In this document: one piece after another, positions 1,527-45,686 of the stretch
Layout of the letters: each line of letters opens with the position of its first letter
Numbering within the stretch: the first letter of the stretch is position 1
Virus record (IMG/VR): IMGVR_UViG_3300023174_000045
Span: 124,001 to 188,000 of that record
Reading direction: 5' to 3' (one strand)
DNA: 64,000 bases
Program-made: the position numbers and the translations under genes
Notes under the pieces: generated by a model
Told to the model about the DNA's origin: nothing
Databases searched by the model: none
The model's input: the letters and a program-made list of their open reading frames with translations, nothing else

Positions 1527-4187
1527 ATGAGTTATATTGACGCACTATTTGATCGTGAACACGATCGCATTCATGTTGTAGAACGCCGCGACGGCAAACG
1601 GCAGTATCGAGAGTATCCTGCCAATTATGTGTTCTACTACGACGACCCCCGAGGCAAGTTCCAAAGTATCTACGGCACGCCAGTGTCAAGGTTCAGTACC
1701 CGCAACAACAAAGAATTCCGCAAGGAAGTCCGAGCACAAAGCGGGCGACAGATCTACGAATCGGACATAAATCCCATATTCCGTTGCTTTGAAGAAAACT
1801 ACCGAGACCAAGACGCCCCCACATTACACACAGCATTTTTTGACATTGAAGTTGCTTTTGATGCTGTGCGTGGATTCTCGCCTGTGGAGGATCCTTTCAA
1901 TCCCATCACTGCTATATCGGTATATCTGGATTGGCTGGAGCAACTTGTGACACTTGTTGTGGCACCACGCCACATGAGTGCAGAGACTGCTCGTGAGATC
2001 TGTGCGGAATTTGAGAACACTGTGCTGTGCGAATCTGAAACAGACATGGTGAAGATGTTCCTGGACCTAATCGAAGATGCAGACATCTTGAGTGGTTGGA
2101 ATTCAGAAGGCTATGACATACCCTACACAATAAACCGTGTGACACGAGTACTCAGCAAAGACGACACCCGACGTTTTTGTTTGTGGGGGCAGTTTCCCAA
2201 GAAACGTATGTTTGAACGTTTTGGTGCTGAACAAGAAACTTATGACTTGGTGGGTCGTGTGCATATGGACTATATGCAACTGTATCGCAAATACACTTAT
2301 GAAGAGCGTCATAGTTATAGCCTGGATGCCATTGCTGAATACGAACTGGGTGAACGCAAAACACAATACGAAGGCACACTAGATCAATTGTACAACAACG
2401 ACTTTCCAAAGTTTATTGAATACAACCGACAAGATACATTGTTGTTGGACAAACTGGACAAGAAATTACGTTTCTTGGAACTGGCCAGCGAACTGGCACA
2501 TGCCAACACTGTGCTGTTGGCCACCACAATGGGTGCTGTGGCAGTGACTGAGCAGGCCATTATCAACGAAGCACATGAACGTGGCATGGTTGTGCCCAAT
2601 CGCAAGCAACGACTCACTGACGAGGACACACAGGCAGCAGGTGCCTATGTGGCATATCCCAAAAAAGGATTACATGAATGGATTGGGTCTGTGGACATCA
2701 ATTCATTGTATCCCAGTGCAATTCGTGCGTTGAACATGGGGCCAGAAACCATTATAGGTCAACTGCGTCCCATAATGACAGACCGGTATATCAAAGACAA
2801 AATGGCCAAGGGTGACTCATTTGCGGCAGCATGGGAAGGTGTGTTTGCCAGTCTAGAATACACTGCTGTGATGGAACAACAGCGTGGCACAGAGATCACC
2901 ATTGACTGGCAGTCAGGTGAGGAGACTGTACACTCGGGTGCTGAGATTTGGTACATGTTGTTTGACTCAAACCAACCTTGGATACTCAGTGCCAATGGTA
3001 CCATATTCACCTACGAAAAGAAAGGCGTTATTCCTGGCTTGCTGGAACGCTGGTATGCCGAACGCAAAGAAATGCAGGCCAAGAAAAAGGAGGCCAAGGA
3101 TGCCAAAGAGATTGCTTTCTGGGACAAACGTCAACTGGTTAAAAAGATTAATCTCAACAGTTTGTATGGCGCTATTCTTAATCCTGGCTGCCGCTTTTTT
3201 GACAAGCGAATTGGCCAATCAACTACCTTGACCGGTCGAAGTATTGCCAAACACATGGATGCGCACTTGAATGAATGTATCACAGGTGAATATGATCATA
3301 TGGGTAAAGCAGTAATCTACGGTGACACAGACTCCTGCTACTTCTCAGCATGGCCTGTGCTGAAACAAGAAGTTGCCGAAGGCCGCATGGAATGGTCAAA
3401 GGAAATCTGTATTCAGTTATACGATTCAATTGCTGACCAGGTGAACGACTCGTTCCCGGCATTTATGGAACGTGCTTTTCACTGTCCCAGAGACATGGGC
3501 GAGTTGATCAAAGCCGGACGTGAAACTGTAGCAGATCGCGGACTGTTCATCACCAAGAAACGCTATGCTGTGAACGCCATTGACATTGAAAACAAACGAC
3601 TGGACATCAACGGTGCTATTGGCAAGACCAAGGCTACTGGCCTGGATCTAAAGCGCAGTGATACCCCCAAAGTTATTCAAGACTTCTTGTTGGAAATTCT
3701 AAATAAAGTGCTGGCTGGTGCTGAACGTGAAGAAATCATTGAACGTGTGCGTGAGTTCAAGTATGAATTCAAAGAGCGGCCGGGCTGGGAAAAAGGCTCG
3801 CCCAAGCGTGTGAACAACTTGACCAAGTACGGCAAGGAAGAAGAACGCCTGGGCAAAGCCAACATGCCCGGACATGTACGTGCGGCCCTGAACTGGAACA
3901 ACTTGCGCAGAATGAATTCAGACAATTACAGTATGCAGGTGGTTGATGGTATGAAGACCATTGTGTGCAAACTGCGAAGCAATGCCTTGGGCTGGACGTC
4001 AATTGGCTATCCCACAGACGAGATGCACTTGCCGCAATGGTTCAAGGACTTGCCTTTTGATGACACAGAAATGGAAGCCACTGTGGTGGATCAAAAGATT
4101 GACAACTTATTAGGTGTGTTGGACTGGGACCTGGCAGCAGCCACCAACACTGAAAACACATTTACTTCGTTATTTTCTTTCGAATGA
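1527..4187 (+). CDS. DNA polymerase family B (T4 gp43-like)
   Basis: ExoI FDIE, motif A DINSLYPS, motif B KKINLNSLYG, motif C YGDTDS. Confidence 0.97.
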   Translation: MSYIDALFDREHDRIHVVERRDGKRQYREYPANYVFYYDDPRGKFQSIYGTPVSRFSTRNNKEFRKEVRAQSGRQIYESDINPIFRCFEENYRDQDAPTLHTAFFDIEVAFDAVRGFSPVEDPFNPITAISVYLDWLEQLVTLVVAPRHMSAETAREICAEFENTVLCESETDMVKMFLDLIEDADILSGWNSEGYDIPYTINRVTRVLSKDDTRRFCLWGQFPKKRMFERFGAEQETYDLVGRVHMDYMQLYRKYTYEERHSYSLDAIAEYELGERKTQYEGTLDQLYNNDFPKFIEYNRQDTLLLDKLDKKLRFLELASELAHANTVLLATTMGAVAVTEQAIINEAHERGMVVPNRKQRLTDEDTQAAGAYVAYPKKGLHEWIGSVDINSLYPSAIRALNMGPETIIGQLRPIMTDRYIKDKMAKGDSFAAAWEGVFASLEYTAVMEQQRGTEITIDWQSGEETVHSGAEIWYMLFDSNQPWILSANGTIFTYEKKGVIPGLLERWYAERKEMQAKKKEAKDAKEIAFWDKRQLVKKINLNSLYGAILNPGCRFFDKRIGQSTTLTGRSIAKHMDAHLNECITGEYDHMGKAVIYGDTDSCYFSAWPVLKQEVAEGRMEWSKEICIQLYDSIADQVNDSFPAFMERAFHCPRDMGELIKAGRETVADRGLFITKKRYAVNAIDIENKRLDINGAIGKTKATGLDLKRSDTPKVIQDFLLEILNKVLAGAEREEIIERVREFKYEFKERPGWEKGSPKRVNNLTKYGKEEERLGKANMPGHVRAALNWNNLRRMNSDNYSMQVVDGMKTIVCKLRSNALGWTSIGYPTDEMHLPQWFKDLPFDDTEMEATVVDQKIDNLLGVLDWDLAAATNTENTFTSLFSFE

Positions 4188-10263: not shown

Positions 10264-10454
10264 TTAACGAACACTTCAAAAATCAAATAGAGCAAGGTGC
10301 TACTACTATGTTTTTCTATGGCTTAGAATCAGGGTCGGGCCCGTTTAAAATTAATATCACAAATCACAAAGATACATTGGACACATTTCCAACTAACTTA
10401 GAGTTTGTTAGAATGCTGAGTGAAAGTATGCCATTATTCAAGGAAATCGAATGA
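10260..10454 (+). CDS. Hypothetical protein
   Basis: Coupled to both neighbours. Confidence 0.6.
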   Translation: MINEHFKNQIEQGATTMFFYGLESGSGPFKINITNHKDTLDTFPTNLEFVRMLSESMPLFKEIE

Positions 10455-11410
10455 GCACAGTAGTTGTCACAGGCATCTCAGGATTCATAGGTGGCCAAAC
10501 TGCACTGCTGTTGAAAGACGCAGGCGAACGTGTGATTGGCATTGATCGCCACCCACTGCCAGCACACCTCAAAGGTGTGTGTGATCGATTTGTGCAGGAA
10601 GATTTTTCCAGCAAACACGCACTCAGTGTGATTGTGCAAGAACTCCCTGACGCCATTGTACACTGTGCCGGTGCCAGCCTGGTTGGTCCCAGCATGAAGG
10701 ATCCAGCCTTGTACTACCAAAACAATGTGGTAGACACATTTGAATTGTTGGAAATTGTTCGCCGGGCGTTACCAAAAACCAAGATTATCTTCAGTAGCAG
10801 TGCAGCCACATACGGTGAGCCTGTGATGTTGCCTGTACACGAAGTTGATCCTGCTGAACCTGTGTCACCATATGGTCAAAGCAAACTCATGGTGGACATG
10901 ATGTTGGAATCATATCATCGTGCCTATGATCTCAACTGTGTGAGTTTTCGTTATTTCAATGCCTGTGGTGCTGATCCAAAGAAGCGGCATGGTCAAGCAC
11001 CGGGTGCCACACACATCATTGCCAGAGTGTTGGAAGCCCTTAGAGATGACAGCGAGTTCACGTTAAATGGTGTAGACTTTCCCACCCCGGATGGTACTTG
11101 TGTGAGAGACTACGTGCATGTGGAAGACATAGCACGAGCACACAGCCTGGCTATCTATCATGACATTGCCTCAGGTGTGTATAATCTAGGCTCCAACAAC
11201 GGAACCAGCAATCGAGAAATCATTGCCGCAGCCGAGCGTGTGACTGGACGGAAATTGAAAGTGATTATGGGTACAGCCAGGCCGGGTGATCCTGCTGTGC
11301 TCACTGCCAGTGCTGCCAAGTTTGGCCGGGTTGGGGAAGGTTGGCGACAGTTTGAACTGGATGACATGATTCAACACGCCTGGAACTGGTATGTTCGAAA
11401 AGATACTTGA
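10451..11410 (+). CDS. galE: UDP-glucose 4-epimerase-like SDR
   Basis: TGISGFIG, SSSAATYG, YGQSK, RYFNACG, RDYVHV. Confidence 0.88.
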   Translation: MSTVVVTGISGFIGGQTALLLKDAGERVIGIDRHPLPAHLKGVCDRFVQEDFSSKHALSVIVQELPDAIVHCAGASLVGPSMKDPALYYQNNVVDTFELLEIVRRALPKTKIIFSSSAATYGEPVMLPVHEVDPAEPVSPYGQSKLMVDMMLESYHRAYDLNCVSFRYFNACGADPKKRHGQAPGATHIIARVLEALRDDSEFTLNGVDFPTPDGTCVRDYVHVEDIARAHSLAIYHDIASGVYNLGSNNGTSNREIIAAAERVTGRKLKVIMGTARPGDPAVLTASAAKFGRVGEGWRQFELDDMIQHAWNWYVRKDT

Positions 11411-11981
11411 GTTTGAAACAGCCGTGGTCCAGTTCACTGGTGCGCCATATGCTGTGATGACTGACTGTTGTACCCATGCCATTGAATTGTGCATGCGGTA
11501 TGACCGGGTGGAGTTTTGTGCATTCACCCCATTTACCTATTTGAGCATACCCATGCTCATGCACAAGTTAGGTATCAAATATGCGTACGAAGTAGGTGAT
11601 CCTGCTCAATGGGTAGGCGAATATCGGTTTAGAAAAACACGAATCTGGGACAGTGCTCGACGCTTAGAACGCAACATGTATCGACCAGGACAGATACAAT
11701 GCGTGAGTTTTGGATATGACAAACCCTTGCCTATTGGGCGTGGCGGTGCAATATTGTTGGATGATGCTGAAGCTTATCACAACTTGTTGGCCATGCGTTA
11801 CGATGGACGAGATTTAACTGCATCGCCCTGGGTCTCACAACAAACTTTTAAGGTCGGATATCATTATCGACCTACAATAGAAGAAGCTGAACGTGGATTG
11901 GAGTTGTTAAATCAATACACCAGCCAACCACCAAGACAGATAGTTTATCCAGACTGCAGACAAATTATTATTATAGATTGA
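11391..11981 (+). CDS. DegT/DnrJ-type sugar aminotransferase (short)
   Basis: CCTHAIEL, WDSA, SFGYDKPL..GRGG with PLP Lys. Confidence 0.75.
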   Translation: MFEKILEFETAVVQFTGAPYAVMTDCCTHAIELCMRYDRVEFCAFTPFTYLSIPMLMHKLGIKYAYEVGDPAQWVGEYRFRKTRIWDSARRLERNMYRPGQIQCVSFGYDKPLPIGRGGAILLDDAEAYHNLLAMRYDGRDLTASPWVSQQTFKVGYHYRPTIEEAERGLELLNQYTSQPPRQIVYPDCRQIIIID

Positions 11982-12024: not shown

Positions 12025-12765
12025 ATGGGCTACGACAAAGTATATATTAGCAACGACGAAGAAACTGTGAATACCAGCAAAAATTTATCACAAATACTTA
12101 GAGAACAAATGAAAGCCCGAGGTCAACGCTTCTGGGCTGGCGACAACATCAGCGATTACATGAGCGAAGCAGTGAAAGAAAAACTCATTGACGAAGCCAC
12201 AGTGGCATTTGAAGGTGTGTTAGATGCGTTACTAATTGACAGAGAAAACGATCCAAACTCAAAAGGCACAGCACGGCGCCTGGCTAAAATGTACTACAAC
12301 GAAATAATGGCAGGAAGATATGAACCAGCACCAGACGCAACAGCATTTCCAAATGATTCAGCAGACCGTTATGAAGGCATGCTGGTTGTACGCAGTGAAC
12401 TTCGCAGTATGTGCAGTCATCATCATCAACCAGTTAGTGGGGTCGCCTATATTGGAATCATCGCTGCCAACAAGCTCATTGGTCTATCTAAGTATACTCG
12501 CATTGCTCAATGGTGTGCTAGGCGTGGTACTTTACAGGAAGAACTGTGCATAGACATTGCCAATGAAATCATGGCAGCAACTGCGTCAAAGGATGTTGGT
12601 GTGTACATTCAGGCAGTGCATGGATGCTGTGAAAACCGTGGCATTATGGCACATAGTTCGTTGACACAGACCACTGTGTTGCGAGGTGCGTTTAAAACGG
12701 ATGACAGTGTTAAAAAAGAGTTCATGGACAATATTAAATTGCAACAAGAGTTTGCACCTCGCTGA
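12025..12765 (+). CDS. folE: GTP cyclohydrolase I
   Basis: SMCSHH, GLSK..R, LQE, HGCC..RG. Confidence 0.95.
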   Translation: MGYDKVYISNDEETVNTSKNLSQILREQMKARGQRFWAGDNISDYMSEAVKEKLIDEATVAFEGVLDALLIDRENDPNSKGTARRLAKMYYNEIMAGRYEPAPDATAFPNDSADRYEGMLVVRSELRSMCSHHHQPVSGVAYIGIIAANKLIGLSKYTRIAQWCARRGTLQEELCIDIANEIMAATASKDVGVYIQAVHGCCENRGIMAHSSLTQTTVLRGAFKTDDSVKKEFMDNIKLQQEFAPR

Positions 12766-16257: not shown

Positions 16258-17297
16258 GTGTATGGACTGATTGGGATCCATTGGAAGAAGTCATAGTAGG
16301 CAACTGCTATTCTCCTGGTGCTCTCAATTGGTTTGTTGAACCCGCATTACAACACAAGTTCAACAACATACTAACGGAAACCAAACAAGATCTCAATAAT
16401 CTAGCAGTGTTATTGCAAGGACTGGGTGTACAGGTACACCGTCCGCAAGTACATGCCAGTACACACAGTGTAGATTTAGCAACATTCTCAGTACCATGCC
16501 CTACCAGTCCAATGGTGCCAAGAGATCAATATCTAGTGTATGGCGATACAGTGTATCAAACCTATACCAGCATGAATGACAGGTATTTTGACAGTCTCGG
16601 CTATTATAATATCTTTCAAGGATTATTTGATCAAGGGCATAACTGGATCAGTCAGCCGCCACCTAATCTTCGCAACTTACCTGCTGATAAAAATTGGAGC
16701 AATCAAGGATCGCTAATTTACAATCACTTGTATCACAATCAACTGTTGTGGCACACTGCTACCATGTTCAAGTGTGGCGATAGACTGATTACCAATACCA
16801 CAGGCCCAGGCACTCAATCTGGGCTAGAATGGATGCGCAGAAACTTGCCTGCAGACACCGTGGTAGAAAATACTAGTACCGCCATGCACAACTGGGGACA
16901 CATTGATCATGGATTTTTCATGATTGACGATGACACAGTGATCTGTGTTGATCGTGAGTTTGTTCCTGAATGTTTGCGTGACAAAACTGTGCATGAGGTA
17001 TATCAGTATCTTCCCAAGGAAAGTATTGATCCTGCTACACCGATAGACCGACTGCTTGATCCCAGCAAAGGATACGAACAGGTTGTGGCGTTTGATACCA
17101 ATGTATTGGTAGTTGATTCGCACAATATTGTGTTTGACAACAACATGCCCGAACTGTTTGAGTTCTTGGCAACACTTAGTGTAAAATGTTATGTAGCACC
17201 GCTGAGACACAGAAAGTTTTGGGCTTCAGGAATACATTGTTCAACCTTGGATATTCGACGCCGTGGTCAAAAAAGAAAGATTATCAATGAAGTATGA
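16254..17297 (+). CDS. Amidinotransferase (pentein family)
   Basis: WDPLEEVIVG, PRD, HIDH, GIHCSTLD with catalytic Cys. Confidence 0.85.
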   Translation: MSVWTDWDPLEEVIVGNCYSPGALNWFVEPALQHKFNNILTETKQDLNNLAVLLQGLGVQVHRPQVHASTHSVDLATFSVPCPTSPMVPRDQYLVYGDTVYQTYTSMNDRYFDSLGYYNIFQGLFDQGHNWISQPPPNLRNLPADKNWSNQGSLIYNHLYHNQLLWHTATMFKCGDRLITNTTGPGTQSGLEWMRRNLPADTVVENTSTAMHNWGHIDHGFFMIDDDTVICVDREFVPECLRDKTVHEVYQYLPKESIDPATPIDRLLDPSKGYEQVVAFDTNVLVVDSHNIVFDNNMPELFEFLATLSVKCYVAPLRHRKFWASGIHCSTLDIRRRGQKRKIINEV

Positions 17298-17688
17298 AAC
17301 ACTAGAAGAAGCGCAGGCAGCAGGTGTTGCGCCTTGGGACCTCAAGATTGGAGAATATAGCGACTACCATGTCTCTGTGTTCCAAGATCGATATCCTGTG
17401 GCTCGTGGACATTTGTTGTTTGTGCCGCAATACAATACAGATGAAGTGATAACAGACTGCTTTGAATCAGCCATGCGGCATGGTCGTAGACTGGTACGAG
17501 ATGGAGAATGTGATGCATTCAACATTGGCATCAACATGGGCGAGGCCGCTGGCCAAACTGTGATGTATCCACATGTGCATTTGATTCCCCGACGCCATGG
17601 CGACTGTGCTGATCCTGTGGGCGGTATACGTGGAGTCGTATTTGGACAAGCCAACTACAAAGCCGCAGGCTATCAACAGCCAGCATAA
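17287..17688 (+). CDS. HIT-family nucleotide hydrolase
   Basis: AGQTVMYPHVHLIPR. Confidence 0.85.
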   Translation: MKYETLEEAQAAGVAPWDLKIGEYSDYHVSVFQDRYPVARGHLLFVPQYNTDEVITDCFESAMRHGRRLVRDGECDAFNIGINMGEAAGQTVMYPHVHLIPRRHGDCADPVGGIRGVVFGQANYKAAGYQQPA

Positions 17689-17699
17689 GTATTTCTTTA

Positions 17700-17763
17700 A
17701 GCGGTCTTTGAGCATCATCCCGCTATACAAATTCTGCTGCCTATGCTAAAATTAACATAGGAG
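17700..17763 (+). promoter_or_regulatory. preQ1-I-like riboswitch candidate with SD-sequestering hairpin
   Basis: AGCGG/CCGCT stem, loop ending in C, ATACAAA tail, AGCA/TGCT pseudoknot, CCTATG/CATAGG over SD. Confidence 0.6.
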
Positions 17764-17770
17764 AAAAAGC

Positions 17771-18268
17771 ATGTCACCAGTAACATACAAATACACATCA
17801 ACCAAAGAATATCACGATGCATTTCCATGCGCATATCGGCAGTGGCGAGCAGACAGCCATTGTAATTTGATACACGGCTATTCGTTTAGTATGAAGTTTT
17901 ATTTTGGCACTGACAACTTAGACGCACGTAACTGGGCCGCTGACTATGGCGGCTTAAAAGAACTCAAAGGTGTGTTGGAAAGTCAATTTGATCATACATT
18001 GCTAGTGGCCGAAGACGATCCTGAACTAGAATTGTATTTAGAAATGCAAAACAAAAACATTGCCAAGTTGACTATATTACCTAAACTAGGATGCGAAGGA
18101 CTTGCTGATCAGCTGTACAAATATGTCAACGGCGTTTACATTCCTGACTTTTGGGGCCCAGGTGAAGCTGAACGTCTTTGGTGCTATCGTGTAGAGGTGC
18201 GTGAAACACAAAGTAACATGGCTTTCCGAGAAGGTCATAGAGAATGGAACGAAGATTTATTTGTGTGA
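17771..18268 (+). CDS. queD: 6-carboxytetrahydropterin synthase
   Basis: HCNLIHGY, FDH, GCEGLA, VEVRET. Confidence 0.9.
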   Translation: MSPVTYKYTSTKEYHDAFPCAYRQWRADSHCNLIHGYSFSMKFYFGTDNLDARNWAADYGGLKELKGVLESQFDHTLLVAEDDPELELYLEMQNKNIAKLTILPKLGCEGLADQLYKYVNGVYIPDFWGPGEAERLWCYRVEVRETQSNMAFREGHREWNEDLFV

Positions 18269-18320: not shown

Positions 18321-19163
18321 ATGAGCACACATGATTTTGACATTTCCGTATTACTTCCCACGCGGGCAAGAACTGACATGCTGTTTCGCAGTATTCGAAC
18401 ACTGTTTGATCTAGCAGACAACAAAGATCGCATATATCTTTTGGTTGGTTTTGACCGCGACGATGCCAAGGGCATTGACTATTTCAGTCAAGAGATACAA
18501 CCTTGGTTGGCCGAAAATGACATTGAATACAGTGCTATGATTTTTGAGCCCATGGGGTATGAAAACTTAAATGTGTATTACAATCTGTTGGCCAAGCAAC
18601 AATCCGCTGATTGGTATTTTGTCTGGAATGATGATGCAACCATGGTCACCCAGGGATGGGACACAGTGATTCGCAACCACAACGCTGAGTTTCAAATACT
18701 CAAAGTGCATACGCATCATGAACACCCTTACAGTATTTTCCCCATTGTGCCACACAAATGGTATGAACTATTGGGCACATTGAGCCGACATCAGATGATT
18801 GACGCTGAAATAAGTCAAATGGCTTATATGTTGGACATGGTAAAAATTGTCGACATTGATGTGATTCATCAACCTTCGCCTGTGCCCAAAGTGCGATTTG
18901 AAAATACCATCAATGATGTTAGAGATTTTCATCATGAGACCTGGAGGAATCAACGCATGAAAGATTGTGCAACGCTGGCAACATACATGCACTCAGTTGA
19001 TCCCAACAGTACCACATTCTTCAGAAATGTGCTGGAAGGCCGGCAAGATCCTTGGGAAAAATTAGTGGCCAACGACATCAACAAACAACAAATACAATTT
19101 CCCATTGCAGTAGAACAACAAACATATTTTCCTGCTGAACTAAAGATTGGTCTGAATTCATGA
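18321..19163 (+). CDS. GT2-like glycosyltransferase
   Basis: SVLLPTR, VWNDD motif. Confidence 0.75.
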   Translation: MSTHDFDISVLLPTRARTDMLFRSIRTLFDLADNKDRIYLLVGFDRDDAKGIDYFSQEIQPWLAENDIEYSAMIFEPMGYENLNVYYNLLAKQQSADWYFVWNDDATMVTQGWDTVIRNHNAEFQILKVHTHHEHPYSIFPIVPHKWYELLGTLSRHQMIDAEISQMAYMLDMVKIVDIDVIHQPSPVPKVRFENTINDVRDFHHETWRNQRMKDCATLATYMHSVDPNSTTFFRNVLEGRQDPWEKLVANDINKQQIQFPIAVEQQTYFPAELKIGLNS

Positions 19164-20380
19164 GCATGATGCAAAGCCAAACAATTGATCATTGTTTGAT
19201 TTCCAAAAACGCAGTGACCAAGATTTTAGATCTAGGGCAACATCCTTATGCTGACACATTCGTAAGACCAGATCAGTTGCATTTGTCTGAACCTGTGTTT
19301 CCATTGCATGTGTATATGAATGAGAAGTCAGGACAAATTCAACTGCGCTACATCAGCAACGCTGAAGAACGCTACAATTTGTACAGTTACAGTTACACTT
19401 CCAGCAATTCAAAATTTGCAAGAGATCACTGGGACAGTTACGCACGGTCTATTGTTGAAAAATGTCGGCCTCAAGGGCTGGTTGTAGAAATTGGCAGCAA
19501 TGACGGATATTTGATCAATCAATTTAGATCACATCAACTGCCTACTCTAGGCGTTGACAGTAGCCGATACATGTGCGACCTGGCCGAATCACTGGGACAA
19601 CCTTGTGTGAATGCTGTGTTTGATCTTGCAGTGGCCGAACAAATAACCACTCAACACGGCCTGGCCAAATTGGTCATTGCCAACAATGTGTTCAATCATG
19701 CCAATGATCCTGTGAGCTTTGCTCGTGGTGTGGCTGAGTTGTTGGACCACGACGGTGTGTTTGTGTTTGAACTGCCTTACTGGGGAGCCATGGTTGACGC
19801 CGCACGATTTGACCAAGTATATCATGAACATGTGAGTTATTTCACTGTAAAAAGCTCTTGGAACCTGTTGCGAGCAGCTGGCATGACCATGATGGACTTT
19901 GAGCATGTGGATTACCATGGTGGTTCCATACGTGTGTTTGCACAAGTGGGCAACAAGTCAATGTCTGTCAAAATACAACAAGCCATAGAACAAGAAACTG
20001 CCGACGGATTGTTTTCTGTGCAACGATATCAAGTCATGCAACAACAAATGATACAGCAACGAGACACATGGTTACAGAATTTTTATACCATGCGTGTGGT
20101 GTCTCCTGATGCAGTGATAATTGGTGTGGGGGCTGCTGCCAAAGCCAACACATGGTTGAACTGGCACGGATTAAACTCATCCACATTGCATTGCATCACT
20201 GACAGTTCTGAGCACAAACAAGGCAAGTACACTCCACTGAGTCGAATTCCCATCCGGGGTGACGAAGAGTTTGCCAAGCATGCTGAACCCATTGCGCTGA
20301 TACTGAGCTGGAACATCAGCGCCGGACTCAAACAAGCCTTGTTGAAAATCAATCCCAACACAAAGTTTATTTCACAATGA
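19160..20380 (+). CDS. NDP-sugar C-methyltransferase
   Basis: LDLGQHP, EIGSNDG, ANNVFNH, YHEH, GAAAKANT. Confidence 0.85.
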   Translation: MSMMQSQTIDHCLISKNAVTKILDLGQHPYADTFVRPDQLHLSEPVFPLHVYMNEKSGQIQLRYISNAEERYNLYSYSYTSSNSKFARDHWDSYARSIVEKCRPQGLVVEIGSNDGYLINQFRSHQLPTLGVDSSRYMCDLAESLGQPCVNAVFDLAVAEQITTQHGLAKLVIANNVFNHANDPVSFARGVAELLDHDGVFVFELPYWGAMVDAARFDQVYHEHVSYFTVKSSWNLLRAAGMTMMDFEHVDYHGGSIRVFAQVGNKSMSVKIQQAIEQETADGLFSVQRYQVMQQQMIQQRDTWLQNFYTMRVVSPDAVIIGVGAAAKANTWLNWHGLNSSTLHCITDSSEHKQGKYTPLSRIPIRGDEEFAKHAEPIALILSWNISAGLKQALLKINPNTKFISQ

Positions 20381-20787
20381 AACACTACAACATCTACAAC
20401 AACAATGAAAAAGGTCTGGGAAGTTTCCAAGACAATCGAGGAACCATCACAGATATTTTTCATCATATCAACGTAAACTCTGCTTGTATCATTACCAACA
20501 CTCCAGGTGCAGTTCGTGCCAATCACTATCATGAATTGACCACACAGTATACCTATGTGTTGTCTGGATCATTGGATTACTATTCCAAGCCGGTGGGCAG
20601 TACAGAACCAGCTGATGTGATCACAGCAGGCCCCGGCGATATGATAATCAGCAAACCCAATGAGATACATGCATGGCGTACCGGTGCCGAAGGATGCACA
20701 TTGATTGCATTTGCACAAGGTCCACGTGGCGGCGAAGACTACGAAAATGACACTGTGCGTGTAGATTCAATCATTCCCGATGCCTAA
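20377..20787 (+). CDS. Cupin, sugar isomerase/epimerase-like
   Basis: DNRG, RANHYH, EIHA. Confidence 0.75.
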   Translation: MKHYNIYNNNEKGLGSFQDNRGTITDIFHHINVNSACIITNTPGAVRANHYHELTTQYTYVLSGSLDYYSKPVGSTEPADVITAGPGDMIISKPNEIHAWRTGAEGCTLIAFAQGPRGGEDYENDTVRVDSIIPDA

Positions 20788-21373
20788 AGCAGTTGTATTT
20801 GGGGTACATGGCGGCATAGGCACAGCCACTACAGAACATTTTTTGGCAGCTGGATACACTGTGGTGCCTGTAACCAGACAATTGATTGACTTTGCACAAC
20901 TTAACAGTTACAATGCAGTCAGTGAGTTGTTGATGAATCATCAACCGGATGTGGTTGTTAACTGTGCAGGTCATTTTGACCGCACAAATACCCAACCTCA
21001 CAGCATGACGTTTGATGTCAATGTTGGTTCTAATTGGGCCGTTATACAGCATTATATGAACAACGTACCTAAAAAATCAGTGCATGTAGTAATGGTGGGA
21101 TCCAGTGCTTACAGTTCTGGTCGCAAGAACTACATGTTGTATTCGGCCAGCAAGGCAGCAGTGTACAACTTATGGCAGGGTGCAGTTGAATATTTTTTAG
21201 ACAGCACAGTGTGTGTAAGTTTGATCAATCCTGTGCGAACTCGTACTGCCATGATTGGAACTGATGTCGCTGGTCCATGTTTGGAACCAGCTGACGTGGC
21301 TAGAGAAATTTTAAACATTGCATCAACTACAAGAAATCAAGTGGTTGATATGAACTATTCCAAGGAGAAATAA
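20780..21373 (+). CDS. Short-chain dehydrogenase/reductase
   Basis: GVHGGIG, VVNCAG, YSASK. Confidence 0.85.
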   Translation: MPKAVVFGVHGGIGTATTEHFLAAGYTVVPVTRQLIDFAQLNSYNAVSELLMNHQPDVVVNCAGHFDRTNTQPHSMTFDVNVGSNWAVIQHYMNNVPKKSVHVVMVGSSAYSSGRKNYMLYSASKAAVYNLWQGAVEYFLDSTVCVSLINPVRTRTAMIGTDVAGPCLEPADVAREILNIASTTRNQVVDMNYSKEK

Positions 21374-22147
21374 ATGAAAATTGGTATTATTGGTCGAGGC
21401 ACTGTGGGCAAGGCAGTGTATGAAGGCTTGTCACATCTAGGGCACAAAATGAGTTTCTTTGATCCAGCATATGAAGGATCCACGCTGAATGATGTATTGA
21501 GCACAGACTGTGTGTTCATTTGTGTGCCAACCAATCAAGCTGACAATGGCGATTGCGACACCAGCATTGTGGAAAAAGTCATCAGCGAATTAGACACCGC
21601 CGGATACCAAGGCCTAGTGGGAATCAAAAGCACTGTGGTACCCGGCACCAGCGATCGACTGTCTGCTGCTCATCCTAACTTACGCATTTGCAGTGTGCCA
21701 GAATTTTTACGTGCCAAAACAGCCTTGGCCGACTTCATGTACAATCATGATTTGTTGATCATTGGCAGTCATCGTGAAGAGGACTTTGACACAGTCAAGG
21801 CCATACACGGGAATCTTCCCAAAGCAGTGTCGTGTGTCAAACCAGCCGAAGCCGAAGTGGTCAAGTACTTCAACAATGTAAATCATTCAGTGCAGATTAT
21901 CTTTGCCAATATTGCCTACGAGGTATGTAACAAACTAGGTTTGGACTACAACAATGTTTACAATGCCATTATCAAAAGAGAATGTTTCAATCCAGCATAC
22001 TTGATGTGCAATGACAACCTGAGAGGATTCGGCGGACATTGTTTGCCCAAGGACACCGCTGCCTGGGCCAACTTGGTACGTGATCTAGGACTTGAATTTG
22101 ACCTGATCACGGCCACCATCAAAGACAACGAGAAAATAAACAAATGA
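21374..22147 (+). CDS. UDP-glucose/GDP-mannose dehydrogenase family (no C-terminal domain)
   Basis: GRGTVG, CVPT, KSTV, PEFLR, GFGGHCLPKD. Confidence 0.88.
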   Translation: MKIGIIGRGTVGKAVYEGLSHLGHKMSFFDPAYEGSTLNDVLSTDCVFICVPTNQADNGDCDTSIVEKVISELDTAGYQGLVGIKSTVVPGTSDRLSAAHPNLRICSVPEFLRAKTALADFMYNHDLLIIGSHREEDFDTVKAIHGNLPKAVSCVKPAEAEVVKYFNNVNHSVQIIFANIAYEVCNKLGLDYNNVYNAIIKRECFNPAYLMCNDNLRGFGGHCLPKDTAAWANLVRDLGLEFDLITATIKDNEKINK

Positions 22148-23034
22148 GTAAAATACTAGTAACCGGTGCTTCAGGTTTGTTGGGCACAGAATTTTGTCGA
22201 CAGTTGATCAATGACGGTCACATTGTGTATGCGGTGGACAATCACAGTCGTAGCACAACCATTCCCAGTTGCAGTGAATGGTATCCCATGGATCTAAACA
22301 ATGTTGATACCATCAACAGTTTGCCCACAGACTTTGATTACATCTATCACTACGGTGCCATCAACGGTACCACCAACTTCTACAACATGCCCAACAAGGT
22401 GTTGGAAAATAACTTTGTGTGTGATTTGAACATTTTTAATTTTGCTCGAAAGTGCAAGAATCTAACACGTTTGGTGTATGCTTCAAGTTCAGAAATTGTA
22501 GCCGATGATGCTGTGAGTCCTGTGCCAGAGCACACTGATGTGTTGATTAAAAACATTCACAATGCACGTTGGAGTTATAGACTGGCCAAGATCACTTCAG
22601 AAAACTACTTGGTCAATTCAGACTTGCCTTACATGATCATTAGATATTTCAATGTGTACGGCGAGAACAGCAAGCAAGGACATTTCTTAGGCGATCAAAT
22701 CAGCAAGATACGCAAGGGTGTGTTCTCTGTTATTGGCGCACAAGAAACACGCAGTTTCTGTCATGTCAGTGATGCCACTCGTGCCAGTATTTTTGTTGCT
22801 GAAAATTGCAATCGCGAAGTGATCAACGTGGGCAATGATCGTGAAATTTCAATTGGTGATGCAGTCAAGGCCATTGCTGCAATAATGGGCCATGCCAATG
22901 CAGAGTTTGAACAGTTGCCCAGCATGCCTGGATCAGTGACCAATCGACGTCCCGACATCAGCAAACTGCGCAGTATCATGCCTGACTATGAGCCTATGTC
23001 TTTTGAACAAGGCATTAGACAAATTTTATCCTGA
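22144..23034 (+). CDS. NAD-dependent epimerase/dehydratase (UDP-GlcA decarboxylase-like)
   Basis: TGASGLLG, ASSSE, SYRLAK, ETRSFC. Confidence 0.85.
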   Translation: MSKILVTGASGLLGTEFCRQLINDGHIVYAVDNHSRSTTIPSCSEWYPMDLNNVDTINSLPTDFDYIYHYGAINGTTNFYNMPNKVLENNFVCDLNIFNFARKCKNLTRLVYASSSEIVADDAVSPVPEHTDVLIKNIHNARWSYRLAKITSENYLVNSDLPYMIIRYFNVYGENSKQGHFLGDQISKIRKGVFSVIGAQETRSFCHVSDATRASIFVAENCNREVINVGNDREISIGDAVKAIAAIMGHANAEFEQLPSMPGSVTNRRPDISKLRSIMPDYEPMSFEQGIRQILS

Positions 23035-36503: not shown

Positions 36504-36578
36504 GGGCTGATAGCTTAATGGTAAAGCAGTCGACTCATAATCGATTGAGTCTAGGTTCAATTCCTAGTCAGCCCACCA
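36504..36578 (+). tRNA. tRNA CAT, Ile2-like (or Met)
   Basis: Cloverleaf, CGACTCATAATCG arm as in ileX, CCA. Confidence 0.85.
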
Positions 36579-36581
36579 ACA

Positions 36582-36656
36582 CTGGCGTTAGTATAATGGA
36601 TAATACAAAGAGCTTCTACCTCTTGAATGTGGGTTCGATTCCTGCACGCCGGACCA
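36582..36656 (+). tRNA. tRNA-Arg(TCT)
   Basis: Cloverleaf, CCA. Confidence 0.9.
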
Positions 36657-36670
36657 GTAAATACAACAGT

Positions 36671-36753
36671 GCGGGTGTGGTGGAATTGGTAGACACACCT
36701 GGTTTAAGCCCAGACGCTAAGGCGTGAGAGTTCAAGTCTCTCCACCCGTACCA
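36671..36753 (+). tRNA. tRNA-Leu(TAA)
   Basis: Cloverleaf with variable arm, CCA. Confidence 0.9.
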
Positions 36754-36764
36754 AAGGAACAATC

Positions 36765-37238
36765 ATGAGCGATATCAAAATTGAACCACATCATGACAGC
36801 GAAGGCACTGAAGATGACTTCTTTGATGACTTTCGTGCCAATGTGGCTCGATTAGAAGCCGAGCGCCGAGCCAGTGATGAGTTTAAAATCAACAACATGG
36901 AATATGACATGAGCCAGGCCGAGTGGTTTGTAAGCAAGGTGCGTGGCAGTGACAACTACGCACAGAACTTGTATGCTGCCATGTGCAACAACAGTTTTCA
37001 AAAGCAAGATGTTTGGCTGGTGCTGAAAGATGCGCACTGGAGTTGTAGTTGGCGTTACGCTGGTGGTGTTGTGGCTGACTTTAGAGATTGCAACGAAGAC
37101 TACATGAACTGGTACTGCTCAGGCATTGGTCCCAAAGAAGACACTGAGTTTGTGGGCGAAGGCACAGTCACAGACGAAATAGCCGCAGATTTGGCACTCC
37201 TGGGATGGCGTGTGATTGAAGATCCCGACAGCGAATAA
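36765..37238 (+). CDS. Hypothetical protein
   Basis: SD AAGGA. Confidence 0.75.
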   Translation: MSDIKIEPHHDSEGTEDDFFDDFRANVARLEAERRASDEFKINNMEYDMSQAEWFVSKVRGSDNYAQNLYAAMCNNSFQKQDVWLVLKDAHWSCSWRYAGGVVADFRDCNEDYMNWYCSGIGPKEDTEFVGEGTVTDEIAADLALLGWRVIEDPDSE

Positions 37239-37242
37239 CAGC

Positions 37243-37860
37243 ATGTACAAATACACCAATGCTACCCCCGATTGGCTGTATCAACAGCCAAATTTAAGTG
37301 TTGATGCATTACCGATTATCAAAAAAGAATTACTAACATTGTTTGAGTTGAGCAAAGAATTCAGTTTGGTTCCTTATACCAGCACATACATGGAAACGGG
37401 CAACAACGAGTTCATAGATCAGTACTGTCCAACATTGTGCAAAGAATTGAAAAAATTAAACCTACGAGATTCACTCAAGGTATTGGCATTTATTTCTGTT
37501 GTGATAGACAAACATTTTCCCGCCCATGTAGACGCTGAGTCAGAAGTGGCGTTGAATATTCCTTTGATCAACTGCGATGGTACCTATACTGTTTGGTACG
37601 ACGGCCAGACACAGTCAAAAGAATTTGACGATTATTTGATAGGCGTAGAATCTGCAAGAACTGCAATAGAAGGAACTGCTGATAGTTTGATAGAAATTGA
37701 TCGCTGCGAGGCCAACGTACCACGTTGGATCAATGTGAATGTGTTGCATAGACCTGAAACACAGCATGACAAATTAAGAGTTGCGGCTAGTTTGCGTTTT
37801 GATCCCGAACCATTGGACAATCATAGGCAGCTTTGGTCGCATTTGACAGTGTCAAAATGA
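37243..37860 (+). CDS. 2OG-Fe(II) oxygenase-like
   Basis: PAHVD, LNIPL, HRP, RVAASLRF. Confidence 0.65.
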   Translation: MYKYTNATPDWLYQQPNLSVDALPIIKKELLTLFELSKEFSLVPYTSTYMETGNNEFIDQYCPTLCKELKKLNLRDSLKVLAFISVVIDKHFPAHVDAESEVALNIPLINCDGTYTVWYDGQTQSKEFDDYLIGVESARTAIEGTADSLIEIDRCEANVPRWINVNVLHRPETQHDKLRVAASLRFDPEPLDNHRQLWSHLTVSK

Positions 37861-37871
37861 ACATGTTGAAA

Positions 37872-37900
37872 TTGACTGTAAACTTGTGTTTTGTTATAAT
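37872..37900 (+). promoter_or_regulatory. sigma70-type promoter
   Basis: TTGACT-17-TATAAT. Confidence 0.75.
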
Positions 37901-37992
37901 ACTAGCAGTGACGTTCACAAGCTATCAAAATCTAGCTGTAGACATCGGTCAAGCCTGGAGTTTGTGTAAATAACAGTCAACCGGAGACTGCT

Positions 37993-38148
37993 ATGAATTT
38001 GGTCAAATATCGAGATGCTGAGATGTGGACGTATACTTGGTTTTATGTGGGTGATACCGGACACATTGTGAGTCCGTATTTTGAAACAGAAAAACAAGCT
38101 CAGGAGTGGTTTGATCAAATTTTTGAAGGTGTTGAGGAGCAGTTATGA
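37993..38148 (+). CDS. 51-aa hypothetical protein
   Basis: SD GGAG, ATGA overlap with next gene. Confidence 0.6.
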   Translation: MNLVKYRDAEMWTYTWFYVGDTGHIVSPYFETEKQAQEWFDQIFEGVEEQL

Positions 38149-38537
38149 AAAAAGTGTTATTTGGTTTGTTATTGGTATCTGGTACAGTTCTGGCACAAGA
38201 TGTGTATGTGGTGGGCGCCCAGCCCAGGTATGTTACTGTGCAACAACAACAATGTCATGTAGTCAACGTGACTGAAAACAACAGCGGCGTTGGCACTGTG
38301 ATTGGTGCTGTGGCTGGTGGTGTAATCGGACATCAAGTGGGTCGTGGGTTTGGTCGCGATGTGGCCACTGTGTTGGGCACCGGCATTGGCGCTTCGGTGG
38401 GACAACGCATTGGACAAGATCAACAACAAACAGTGACCAAGCAAGTTTGTGACATGGTACCAGTTGTCATACAACAAGGTGAAACTGTGACATTTAATTA
38501 CAAGGGACGAGTGTTTACACAAGTTTTTGGTAATTAA
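38145..38537 (+). CDS. Secreted glycine-zipper 2TM protein (YcfJ-like)
   Basis: Signal peptide, GAVAGGVIGHQVGRG. Confidence 0.8.
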   Translation: MKKVLFGLLLVSGTVLAQDVYVVGAQPRYVTVQQQQCHVVNVTENNSGVGTVIGAVAGGVIGHQVGRGFGRDVATVLGTGIGASVGQRIGQDQQQTVTKQVCDMVPVVIQQGETVTFNYKGRVFTQVFGN

Positions 38538-38539
38538 AG

Positions 38540-38930
38540 TTATTGCTGTATGAAGCCGAGAGAAAAGTGTTCTGGACGGGGGTGCGAATCCCCCCAGGTC
38601 CACCATAAAGAAATTTGATGAAACCAAAAAAAGTAAAACAGTATTTTGTTATAGTAGACAAAGATGACACAGTAAAAAGAGTGTGTTGGGCACCTTTACT
38701 GTGGGATATTCCTAACCTGGGATATCGTTTTACAGGATTTGACGGTGGTATTCCAAAGTTTCTTTATGTCGGGCCTGCATAGTTTCGACAGGGCAACAAG
38801 TAACAGAGTGGACAGCACGGTAGGCGATGACCGTTAATCAAGCAAAAAACGTAAATGCAAACGACGAACAGTTCGCTTTGGCAGCCTAAACACTGCCTAG
38901 GGTAGGAAATACCTCGTAACAGAAACAACC
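38540..38930 (+). ncRNA. ssrA: Circularly permuted (two-piece) tmRNA, tag ANDEQFALAA
   Basis: T arm and CCA end at 38605 precede 5' GGGCCTG at 38771; G3:U70; tag 38857-38889; ends approximate. Confidence 0.92.
38618..38782 (+). CDS. Possible 54-aa ORF in tmRNA intervening segment
   Basis: Open ATG-TAG, no clear SD. Confidence 0.3.
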   Translation: MKPKKVKQYFVIVDKDDTVKRVCWAPLLWDIPNLGYRFTGFDGGIPKFLYVGPA

Positions 38931-38960
38931 CAAAAGGCCTTGACGGGCCTTTTGTCTTTG
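38931..38960 (+). terminator. Intrinsic terminator after tmRNA
   Basis: CAAAAGGCCT-TGAC-GGGCCTTTTG. Confidence 0.8.
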
Positions 38961-38988
38961 TGTATACTACACTATTGAGGAGAACAAC

Positions 38989-39180
38989 ATGAGCAAAGGC
39001 ACACGACCCCGTCCGTCAGTGGTCAGTCAACAAGAACTGGCTGCAAGGCACGAAGCCATATTTGGCCGGAAGCCACCACGAGAACGTTATGTTCCGCCAC
39101 CCTTGCCACCTGAACTGGCAGGACCCAGTTCTTTTGAACAGCAGTTGGGCACCACAAAACTTCCGCCCGGAAGAACATAA
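38989..39180 (+). CDS. Small Pro-rich hypothetical protein
   Basis: SD GAGGAG. Confidence 0.7.
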   Translation: MSKGTRPRPSVVSQQELAARHEAIFGRKPPRERYVPPPLPPELAGPSSFEQQLGTTKLPPGRT

Positions 39181-39205
39181 ATTGGCAAAAGACATTTAAA
39201 AATCG

Positions 39206-39234
39206 TTGACTTTCTTTCATTCATCATATATAAT
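39206..39234 (+). promoter_or_regulatory. Promoter of attenuator 1
   Basis: TTGACT-17-TATAAT; ATG 6 nt downstream. Confidence 0.8.
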
Positions 39235-39239
39235 ACACT

Positions 39240-39347
39240 ATGAACAAGCAAAACGCCCAACTGTCCTTTGAGATACCCTCACATGATTTACACGATTATG
39301 CACGTGAGGCGCTGGCCTATACTAACAGCGGGTGGAGCGGTACCTAA
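39240..39347 (+). CDS. Leaderless 35-aa leader peptide (attenuator 1)
   Basis: MNKQNAQLSFEIPSHDLHDYAREALAYTNSGWSGT. Confidence 0.65.
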   Translation: MNKQNAQLSFEIPSHDLHDYAREALAYTNSGWSGT

Positions 39348-45685: not shown

Positions 45686-45686
45686 A

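What the first reader, a model, noticed from the sequence alone, without database searches (positions are those of the whole stretch)
17684..17773. preQ1-I-like riboswitch upstream of phage queD, possibly with altered ligand
Seen: AGCGG(17700-04) U...C(17719) CCGCU(17720-24) AUACAAAUUC UGCU mirrors the B. subtilis preQ1-I layout AGAGG U...C CCUCU AUAAAAAA. Loop AGCA (17711-14) can pair with UGCU (17735-38). Next, CCUAUG (17740-45) pairs with CAUAGG (17756-61), covering the SD. Loop AGCAU can alternatively pair with AUGCU (17743-47), opening the SD. CATAAGTA at 17684 is a late-promoter-like motif that would put the aptamer at the 5' end. Inference: feedback control of phage deazaguanine synthesis. 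With no queC/queF here, the ligand could be CDG, 7-deazaguanine or host preQ0/preQ1. Phage riboswitches are rare.
Basis: partly seen in the sequence, partly recalled or inferred. Interest (0 to 1): 0.85.

Follow-up and report, generated by a model that had tools for sequence, protein, structure and literature searches.

The report
Phage queD-leader pseudoknot riboswitch candidate
Just upstream of a phage QueD-like gene lies a small knotted RNA, conserved in hundreds of uncultured phages and always next to this enzyme family, that looks like a new relative of the preQ1 riboswitch, seemingly wired to switch translation on rather than off.

Summary
Window 17700-17740 folds as an H-type pseudoknot. 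P2 is in a different register: 17712-14 pairs with 17738-40 and 17716-17 with 17735-36, around a conserved U.C mismatch. More than 270 copies were recovered from IMG/VR phage contigs. Both helices show compensatory changes. L3 has a fixed length and conserved bases. 269 of 274 copies sit directly before a PTPS/QueD-family ORF, across at least 8 subfamilies down to 23% identity. No Rfam 15 family matches, preQ1-I included, even at E<=10. Nothing turned up in the papers searched or in isolate phage genomes. The 3' strand of P2 doubles as the anti-SD strand (window type) or anti-start-codon strand (other type). Knot formation and RBS masking therefore exclude each other, which predicts an ON switch, opposite to classical preQ1-I. 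The ligand is unknown; a guanine-like 7-deazapurine or pterin is the best guess. The window type also carries a sigma70-like promoter inside the element. Verdict: a strongly supported new structured cis-regulatory RNA and probable new riboswitch class or deep preQ1-I variant. Ligand and polarity are untested.

The parts
17684..17691 (+). CATAAGTA, a T4-late-promoter-like hexamer/octamer overlapping the stop codon of the HIT-domain ORF. It would place the transcription start a few nt before P1.
   Evidence: Sequence. TAAATA/TAAGTA or TAnnnT hexamers end 3-16 nt upstream of P1 in 105 of 132 unique relatives, mode 6-8 nt. Inference only; no transcript data.
17700..17704 (+). P1 5' strand (AGCGG).
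   Evidence: Pairs with 17720-24. 99.8-100% paired in 100 sequences, with three pair types at the middle pair and rare swaps at pairs 1 and 2.
17705..17711 (+). L1, variable in length (3-9 nt in the family), starting N-C-U.
   Evidence: Alignments A4-A6 and the length tally.
17712..17714 (+). P2a 5' strand (GCA) inside the P1 loop.
   Evidence: Pairs with 17738-40. In the family the inner three P2a pairs are canonical in 93-98% against 45-51% in shuffles. All five pairs show changes on both sides.
17715..17717 (+). U of the conserved U.C mismatch (17715) plus the P2b 5' strand, C17716 and A17717.
   Evidence: C17716-G17736 and A17717-U17735. Variant UCUAC in L3 always comes with UUA (6 of 6). 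Variant UCCGC comes with UCG in 44 of 45; the one exception has no P1.
17718..17719 (+). L2 (U, C). C17719 is the near-invariant C just before the P1 3' strand.
   Evidence: Invariant in A1-A6. An IMG/VR scan for non-C at this position found one real lineage (U) and four chance hits.
17720..17724 (+). P1 3' strand (CCGCU).
   Evidence: See P1 5' strand.
17725..17734 (+). L3, 10 nt (AUACAAAUUC), of fixed length, with A at positions 3, 5 and 7 and a conserved UC at the end.
   Evidence: The stretch from P1 to P2a is 13 nt in all 135 unique sequences. Invariant columns appear in A1-A3.
17735..17740 (+). P2 3' strand: U17735 and G17736 (P2b), C17737 (mismatch), U17738, G17739 and C17740 (P2a).
17740..17745 (+). 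P3 5' strand (CCUAUG), the anti-SD. It shares C17740 (and C17741/U17742 if the A.C and G.U positions count) with P2a.
   Evidence: 93.9% paired in A1, though mostly invariant. It is in the MFE of the platform.
17756..17763 (+). P3 3' strand (CAUAGG, 17756-61) overlapping the Shine-Dalgarno AGGAG (17759-63).
17724..17752 (+). Embedded sigma70-like promoter: TATACA, 17 nt, TG-c-TAAAAT (-35 in L3, -10 in the P3 loop).
   Evidence: Consensus scan. In the family, L3 'ACA' co-occurs with TGnTAnnnT at 17-18 nt spacing in 73 of 77, against 23 of 126 otherwise.
17771..18268 (+). The regulated ORF: a 165-aa PTPS/QueD-superfamily (T-fold) protein with CxxxHGY.
   Evidence: Pfam PTPS 8.5e-14. QueD equivalog scores 32 bits, below its 89-bit cut-off. 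Profile matches to QueD structures 3jyg and 7v0f. Alignment A7.

Best explanation
The 5' leader of the QueD-like mRNA carries a roughly 41-nt H-type pseudoknot aptamer (17700-17740). It consists of a 5-bp P1 and a P2 formed between the P1 loop and the sequence 10 nt downstream of P1. P2 has a variable part (P2a), a conserved U.C mismatch, and two conserved pairs (P2b). The conserved unpaired bases are N-C-U in L1, Y-C in L2, and alternating A's plus UC in L3. The outer part of the P2 3' strand is also the 5' strand of a helix that masks the ribosome-binding site. In the window type that helix is CCUAUG/CAUAGG over the SD. In the other type it is G-Y-C-A-U-C/G-A-U-G-R-C over the start codon. 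Without the knot, the RBS is masked and QueD-like protein is not made. When the knot is stabilised, most likely by a small planar guanine-like ligand (a 7-deazapurine or pterin of the FolE-QueD-QueE pathway) stacking at the P1/P2 junction or at the U.C mismatch, the masking helix loses its strand and translation turns on. Shown: the structure, its conservation, its gene specificity, and the mutual exclusivity of the two helices. Inferred: that a ligand exists, what it is, and the ON polarity in vivo.
For: The element is conserved upstream of the gene in 66 of 81 sources found by protein similarity. It was found again in over 200 further IMG/VR loci by motif-only scans. It occurs once in the window (66.6 bits; next best 11.2 bits). 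On 82 sequences, 97.4% of P1+P2 cells are paired against 83.8% in shuffles (0 of 500 reach the observed value). The covariation score is 0.429 against 0.155, and slid controls give 34-59%. An anchor-based P2 test that was not selected on P2 gives the same answer. P2b shows compensation in 6 of 6 and 44 of 45 cases. L3 length is fixed and the loop bases are conserved. 269 of 274 copies precede a PTPS/QueD-family ORF; the rest are a false hit, a truncated QueD, or cases with one small ORF in between. The proteins span at least 8 subfamilies at 23-95% identity, with different active-site motifs. The P2 3' strand pairs with the SD/AUG region in the MFE of 131 of 134 sequences. Its duplex energy with its own RBS is -6.96, against -5.82 with permuted partners (z=-9.8) and -2.7 with the strand reversed. 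The anti-start helix has compensatory pairs (C-G or U-A at -1; C only with G at +4). The modelled cost of opening SD..AUG drops by about 4 kcal/mol when the P2 3' strand is engaged, in both types; for the window the drop is 3.3-4.4. Promoter-like hexamers lie just upstream of P1.
Against: There is no binding or expression data, and covariation proves a structure, not a ligand. P2 (7 pairs plus a mismatch) could be stable without any ligand. An ON switch on an early biosynthetic enzyme is unusual and has no obvious rationale. In the window itself only C17740 is shared for certain between P2a and P3, or up to 3 nt if A.C and G.U count. The coupling there is therefore weaker than in the other type. 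The window type carries an internal sigma70-like promoter that would bypass the element. Many sequences are related, so the counts are not independent events. The window's own MFE is not unusual.
Confidence: 0.55

Rival explanations
1. It is an ordinary member of the preQ1-I riboswitch family. It would bind preQ1 or preQ0 and switch QueD translation OFF as feedback.
For: It has the same fold topology and a 5-bp P1 (AGAGG/CCUCU in many relatives). A pyrimidine-C precedes the P1 3' strand, as in type I (for the definition; for the data). It is associated with a queuosine-pathway gene family.
Against: No match to RF00522 or to any Rfam family appears, even at E<=10 on 141-251 nt stretches or at gathering score on 14 diverse loci. 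L1 is 3-9 nt, P2 is 7 pairs plus a mismatch, and L3 is a fixed 10 nt with alternating A's, against the 34-nt aptamer with an A-rich L3 described. The P2 3' strand is complementary to the RBS region rather than containing it.
Confidence: 0.1
2. It is a protein-binding translational operator. The pseudoknot would be recognised by the QueD-like protein itself (autoregulation) or by a phage translational regulator, with no small molecule involved.
For: Pseudoknotted leaders that bind their own gene product are known in T4-type phages (the gene 32 operator; my own knowledge). The element is strictly tied to one gene family.
Against: The proteins downstream differ down to 23% identity and in their active-site motifs, while the unpaired RNA bases stay nearly invariant. 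The element is unique in the window, so it is not a general regulator site. No RNA-binding domain was found in the T-fold proteins.
Confidence: 0.15
3. It is a constitutive structural element with no sensing role. Possible roles are a 5'-terminal fold that protects the mRNA from decay, a folding chaperone that keeps the RBS open, or a thermosensor.
For: The knot probably sits at the very 5' end of the transcript. P2 is fairly long and might form on its own.
Against: This does not explain why only QueD-family genes carry the element. It also does not explain the conserved loop bases and fixed L3 length, or a conserved competing RBS-masking helix that shares the P2 strand.
Confidence: 0.12
4. 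The conservation acts at the DNA level only, as a promoter (TTTACA, 17 nt, TGnTATAAT) plus flanking sequence, and no functional RNA is involved.
For: A near-consensus extended -10 promoter overlaps L3 and P3 in the window type, with the variation pattern of a real -10 box.
Against: The other type keeps P1, P2, L2 and L3 but has no such promoter (103 of 126 lack it). Compensatory base changes in P1, P2a, P2b and the anti-start helix only make sense for RNA.
Confidence: 0.03

Closest known systems
preQ1-I riboswitch (Rfam RF00522; types I-III)
   Same: It is an H-type pseudoknot with a 5-bp P1 whose top pairs are G-C. A cytosine lies immediately 5' of the P1 3' strand, preceded by a pyrimidine as in type I. 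An A-containing tail runs along P1, and P2 is formed by the P1 loop. It is linked to 7-deazaguanine/queuosine pathway genes and is built for translational control.
   Different: It is not detected by the family's covariance model. L1 is 3-9 nt, not 2-3. P2 has 7 pairs with a conserved U.C mismatch, not 3-4 pairs. L2 is only 2-3 nt. L3 is exactly 10 nt with A at alternate positions plus a conserved UC. The aptamer is about 41-47 nt, not 34. The P2 3' strand is the anti-RBS strand, so the predicted polarity is ON rather than OFF. It was found almost only in uncultured phage contigs.
THF-II riboswitch (folE motif)
   Same: It is a small aptamer controlling a gene of the GTP cyclohydrolase I / pterin branch. 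From my own knowledge, its ligand (a pterin or 7-deazaguanine) is read by opposing conserved pyrimidines, which resembles the conserved U.C mismatch in P2 here.
   Different: THF-II is a long hairpin rather than an H-type knot of this layout, and it is an OFF switch of bacterial folE. No Rfam match was found here. The resemblance is a lead, not a test.
Phage T4 gene 32 mRNA pseudoknot operator
   Same: It is a pseudoknot at the 5' end of a phage mRNA leader that controls translation of the downstream gene.
   Different: The T4 operator binds its own protein product and has no conserved small-ligand-type pocket. Here the downstream proteins are too divergent for a shared RNA-protein interface to be likely.
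Known riboswitches carried by phages (glutamine glnA RNA in pelagi- and cyanophages)
   Same: It is a metabolite-type leader RNA encoded by aquatic T4-like phages that also carry tRNAs and two-piece tmRNA (PMC9004378).
   Different: Those are copies of bacterial families that Rfam recognises. This element has no recognised bacterial counterpart in the one genome scan that could be run (1 real hit, on a MAG contig).

Membership tests
preQ1-I riboswitch (RF00522) | Scores at or above the family's gathering threshold with the Rfam covariance model | tested here: not met
   No match at gathering score in the window or in 14 diverse loci. No match even at E<=10 on window 17600-17850 or L093 1060-1200.
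preQ1-I riboswitch (RF00522) | H-type pseudoknot with P2 formed between the P1 loop and the 3' tail | tested here: met
   P1 and P2 are both supported by compensatory changes.
preQ1-I riboswitch (RF00522) | Specificity cytosine immediately before the P1 3' strand, preceded by U (type I) or A (types II/III) (PMC11625349) | tested here: met
   C17719 is invariant in A1-A6 and preceded by U or C. Only one lineage with U at this position was found in IMG/VR. Its role in ligand recognition is untested.
preQ1-I riboswitch (RF00522) | Compact 34-nt aptamer: L1 of 2-3 nt, P2 of 3-4 pairs, A-rich L3 of about 6-7 nt | tested here: not met
   L1 is 3-9 nt. P2 is 4-5 variable pairs plus a U.C mismatch plus 2 conserved pairs. 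L3 is a fixed 10 nt with alternating A's.
preQ1-I riboswitch (RF00522) | P2 3' strand includes SD bases, so ligand binding hides the RBS (OFF) | tested here: not met
   The P2 3' strand is complementary to the SD/AUG region and pairs with it in the MFE of 131 of 134 sequences.
preQ1-I riboswitch (RF00522) | Binds preQ1 or preQ0 | not testable with these tools
   Needs ITC or in-line probing.
Riboswitch (generic: metabolite-sensing cis-regulatory mRNA leader) | Conserved structured aptamer with covariation, conserved unpaired bases, and consistent association with one pathway's genes | tested here: met
Riboswitch (generic: metabolite-sensing cis-regulatory mRNA leader) | Expression platform with mutually exclusive structures coupled to the aptamer | tested here: met
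   The strand shared between P2a and the RBS-masking helix is supported by permutation and compensatory evidence.
Riboswitch (generic: metabolite-sensing cis-regulatory mRNA leader) | Direct, selective ligand binding that changes gene expression | not testable with these tools
QueD (6-carboxytetrahydropterin synthase, TIGR03367), for the regulated gene | Equivalog score and the CxxxHGH zinc/catalytic motif | tested here: not met
   32 bits against a cut-off of 89.25. The window protein has CxxxHGY, and Tyr where canonical members have the first zinc His (A7). It belongs to the PTPS/QueD superfamily, but its reaction is unknown.

The most novel reading that the evidence does not exclude
This is a previously undescribed riboswitch class, found almost only in uncultured aquatic jumbo and T4-like phages. 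It uses a preQ1-I-like knot with an extended, mismatch-containing P2 to sense a guanine-like pathway intermediate (a pterin such as dihydroneopterin triphosphate or CPH4, or a 7-deazapurine such as CDG or preQ0). On sensing it, the element turns ON translation of QueD-family T-fold enzymes. In the window type it acts only on transcripts from the upstream late-type promoter, because an internal sigma70-type promoter bypasses it.
Probability: 0.45. Interest if true: 0.9.

Novelty: new variant of a known kind. Interest (0 to 1): 0.8.

Why it matters
Riboswitches encoded by phages are few, and those known are copies of bacterial families. This would be a class that is abundant in phages, has no recognised bacterial counterpart, and controls the enzyme family at the entry to 7-deazaguanine DNA-modification chemistry. 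It is small (about 45 nt), has hundreds of natural variants, and its structure is already well constrained, so it can be tested directly by ITC, in-line probing and reporters. If the ON polarity holds, it would show the preQ1-I fold rewired to the opposite logic. Its ligand would reveal which intermediate these phages monitor. It could also help assign a function to the non-canonical 'HGY' QueD-like proteins.

Tried and rejected
- **Rfam.** No match at gathering score over the whole window. No match at E<=10 on the element in the window or in a second-type relative. No match at gathering score on 14 diverse loci. The only hit was a chance Thr_leader match on the opposite strand at E=3.7.
- **Single-sequence folding.** Not informative; z=-0.46.
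Within the window type it cannot be told apart from the correct register, because UGC is repeated. It is rejected because UGC covaries with the UCA of L2 and because of the second type.
- **Local extension of P1 (G-N-C with G-N-C inside the loop).** Rejected: the middle pair is canonical in only 40%.
- **MAFFT alignments of the aptamer.** These misplace P1 or P2 when L1 is long. Covariance-model alignments were used instead.
- **Isolate phages.** No copy was found by BLASTN in 50,697 records. Acidovorax phage ACP17, the only DNA-level relative of the gene, lacks the element.
- **Bacterial and archaeal genomes.** One narrow pattern gave 1 real copy, on a MAG contig, and 2 partial chance hits. 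No second scan was allowed.
- **Literature.** Six searches found no description of the motif. One search retrieved the DpdL paper. DpdL (LxxxHRHxF) does not fit the window protein.
- **Gene neighbourhoods of two second-type QueD genes.** No nearby pathway genes that would point to the ligand.
- **QueC, QueF and TGT/DpdA.** Not found among the window ORFs scanned.

Full report
**What is at the coordinates.** The finding lies in the 82-nt gap between a HIT-domain ORF (17263-17688) and a 165-aa ORF (17771-18268). That ORF matches Pfam PTPS at 8.5e-14. It scores only 32 bits on the QueD equivalog model, whose cut-off is 89. The stretch is not remarkable by itself. Its MFE is -17.2 kcal/mol, with z=-0.46 against shuffles. 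No Rfam 15 family matches, either at gathering score over the whole window or at E<=10 on 17600-17850. The only hit there is a chance Thr_leader match on the other strand.

**Comparative evidence.** The protein has more than 600 relatives in IMG/VR, of which 80 loci were fetched. In 66 of 81 sources the same element sits once, on the same strand, directly upstream of the ORF. The sources without it have the gene immediately behind another gene, for example a phosphoribosyltransferase in L008. Scans that used only a piece of the RNA motif recovered over 200 further loci. These include forms whose P1 3' strand is CCUCU or CCACU, and in each the 5' strand carries the complementary change. A covariance model built from the aptamer finds exactly one copy in the window (17697-17743, 66.6 bits, E about 1e-16). 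The next best match in the window scores 11.2 bits. The model also finds exactly one copy in each of 100 loci.

**P1 and P2a.**
In 100 sequences it is 99.8-100% paired. Its middle pair is A-U 37, C-G 33 and U-A 30, and single G-C to C-G and A-U to U-A swaps occur at pairs 2 and 1.
- RNAalifold recovers P1 on its own.
- P2a is the pseudoknot helix. I tested it with an anchor rule that did not use P2 to select sequences: the bases just before UCA in the loop against the bases just after UGC. The inner three pairs are canonical in 93-98% of 135 unique sequences. Shuffles give 45-51%. Each position has four to six canonical pair types.
- On a model-based alignment of 82 sequences, P1+P2a is 97.4% paired against 83.8% in shuffles (0 of 500 reach the observed value). 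The covariation score is 0.429 against 0.155. Slid controls give 34-59%. All five P2a pairs show changes on both sides.

**P2b.**
- The UCA that follows P2a in the loop faces the UGC that precedes P2a downstream. This gives C-G and A-U pairs next to a conserved U.C mismatch.
- Two dedicated IMG/VR scans tested this. When the downstream G is A, the loop C is always U (6 of 6 unique sequences). When the downstream U is C, the loop A is G in 44 of 45. The one exception has no P1 and is a chance hit.

**Window coordinates and loops.**
- P2a: G17712-C17740, C17713-G17739, A17714-U17738.
- Mismatch: U17715 opposite C17737.
- P2b: C17716-G17736, A17717-U17735.
- The remaining loops are L1 (3-9 nt, starting N-C-U), L2 (Y-C, with C17719 nearly invariant) and L3 (always 10 nt, with A at positions 3, 5 and 7 and a conserved UC).
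- A scan for any other base in place of C17719 found one real lineage, which carries U, and four chance hits.

**Gene association.** Of 274 copies with a downstream ORF, 269 are followed by a protein that matches a PTPS/QueD profile. The five exceptions are one regex false positive, one truncated QueD, and three loci in which one extra ORF lies between the element and queD. One of those three, L271, has two copies of the element. The proteins fall into at least eight subfamilies, at 23-95% identity to the window's protein. Some have the canonical CxxxHGH motif. Most, including the window's, have CxxxHGY and lack the first zinc histidine. The window protein does not carry the DpdL signature (LxxxHRHxF) proposed for CDG decarboxylase (PMC10516641). 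The window also encodes FolE (12025-12765) and radical-SAM proteins. No QueC, QueF or TGT/DpdA was found among the ORFs scanned.

**Expression platform.** Two types exist.
- The window type has P3 (CCUAUG/CAUAGG) over the SD. Its first one to three bases are also the last bases of the P2a 3' strand.
- The other type has no P3. There the P2a 3' strand and the next three bases (G-Y-C-A-U-C) pair with the start codon region (G-A-U-G-R-C). The flanking pairs are compensatory: C-G 64 and U-A 13 at position -1, and at +4 C occurs only with G (12 of 12) while U pairs with G or A.
- Over 134 unique sequences, the MFE of the platform pairs the P2 3' strand with the SD/AUG region in 131.
- The duplex energy of that strand with its own RBS is -6.96 kcal/mol. 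Permuted partners give -5.82 (z=-9.8), and the reversed strand gives -2.7.
- In a partition-function model, the cost of opening SD..AUG falls by about 4 kcal/mol when the strand is engaged in the knot. This holds for both types. For the window the fall is 3.3-4.4 kcal/mol, depending on how many bases are counted as engaged.

The knot and RBS masking therefore exclude each other, so whatever stabilises the knot should turn translation on. This is the opposite of classical preQ1-I, in which the P2 3' strand contains SD bases (PMC11625349).

**Transcription.** A TAAATA/TAAGTA or TAnnnT hexamer ends 3-16 nt before P1 in 105 of 132 unique relatives, most often 6-8 nt before. The window type also carries a second, internal promoter-like site: TATACA, 17 nt, TG-c-TAAAAT at 17724-17752. 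Across 203 unique elements, the 'ACA' in L3 co-occurs with TGnTAnnnT at 17-18 nt spacing in 73 of 77, against 23 of 126 otherwise. The -10 variants keep the positions that real -10 boxes keep. A transcript from that site would lack both the aptamer and the anti-SD strand. This is an inference and needs 5'-end mapping.

**Comparison with known families.** The element has the preQ1-I fold class, a P1 with G-C top pairs, and a pyrimidine-C before the P1 3' strand. Type I is defined by UC at that place. It also shares the pathway context. It fails the family's covariance model, and it differs in L1, P2, L2 and L3 and in regulatory logic. I therefore do not file it as a preQ1-I member. It works like a preQ1-I-type knot that has been rewired. 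No Rfam family matched any of the 16 stretches tested. Six literature searches found no description. No isolate phage genome carries it by BLASTN, and ACP17 lacks it. One narrow scan of 185,579 species genomes gave a single real copy, on a MAG contig.

**Host phage.** The DNA polymerase is about 50% identical to those of jumbo phages Phosso and Atu_ph07. The window carries 33 tRNAs and a two-piece tmRNA.

**Verdict.** That the element is a conserved, gene-specific, pseudoknotted cis-regulatory RNA is close to certain; I put it at about 0.9. That it is a small-molecule riboswitch with ON polarity is the best explanation, at about 0.55. The main rivals are a protein-binding operator, a constitutive structural element, and a true OFF-type preQ1-I member. 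The ligand cannot be named from sequence. A guanine-like heterocycle of the FolE-QueD-QueE branch is the most reasonable guess. That guess rests on the invariant C, the U.C mismatch and the gene context.

Noticed in passing
window 36504-47723: 33 tRNA genes, and a two-piece (permuted) tmRNA at 38513-38957 that also matches the betaproteobacterial tmRNA model.
   Followed up: no
window 17724-17752: A sigma70-like promoter (TATACA, 17 nt, TG-c-TAAAAT) is embedded in the RNA element. It is conserved with the element in the window type only (73 of 77 against 23 of 126). It would give a transcript that bypasses the aptamer.
   Followed up: partly
window 17771-18268: The QueD-like protein has CxxxHGY, and Tyr (Phe in other subfamilies) in place of the first zinc-binding His. 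Two of the three canonical zinc ligands are missing, so its reaction may not be CPH4 synthesis.
   Followed up: partly
L271 4080-5470; L282 1385-2361; L215 (minus strand): L271 has two copies of the element, one before an unknown 236-aa ORF and one before queD. L282 has a related 233-aa ORF between the element and queD, and L215 has an 85-aa ORF there. Pfam finds no family for the unknown ORF.
   Followed up: partly
L008 285-4455: Relatives without the element have, in a row: peptide deformylase, a UDP-glucose-dehydrogenase-like protein, a 302-aa Fer4_12 (QueE-like?) protein, a phosphoribosyltransferase, queD and FolE. A PRTase next to deazapurine genes recalls nucleoside-antibiotic-type pathways.
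   Followed up: no
L307-L309 (e.g. L307 1950-2010): One lineage has U instead of the otherwise invariant C before the P1 3' strand, while close relatives (L120, L155) have C. It may be a natural specificity variant or an error.
   Followed up: no
L021 2917-2966 and L194: The conserved U.C mismatch in P2 is a U-A pair here (UGA instead of UGC).
   Followed up: no
window 10451-11981 and 19160-23034: Two clusters of sugar-nucleotide genes flank FolE (12025-12765) and the queD-like gene. They include an epimerase/dehydratase, a DegT-type aminotransferase fragment, a C-methyltransferase, a cupin, an SDR, a short UDP-glucose-dehydrogenase-like ORF and a second epimerase.
   Followed up: no
window 18321-19163: The 280-aa ORF just after queD has no Pfam match. 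It is conserved in the same position in relatives (49% identity in L271).
   Followed up: partly
window 1527-4187: The family B DNA polymerase is about 50% identical to those of jumbo phages Sinorhizobium phage Phosso and Agrobacterium phage Atu_ph07. Related IMG/VR contigs reach 350-380 kb.
   Followed up: partly
window 17743-17747 with 17768-17772: AUGCU can pair with AGCAU, which covers the first two bases of the start codon. This becomes the predicted structure when P3 is weakened. GCAUG at the start is common in the window type but not universal.
   Followed up: partly
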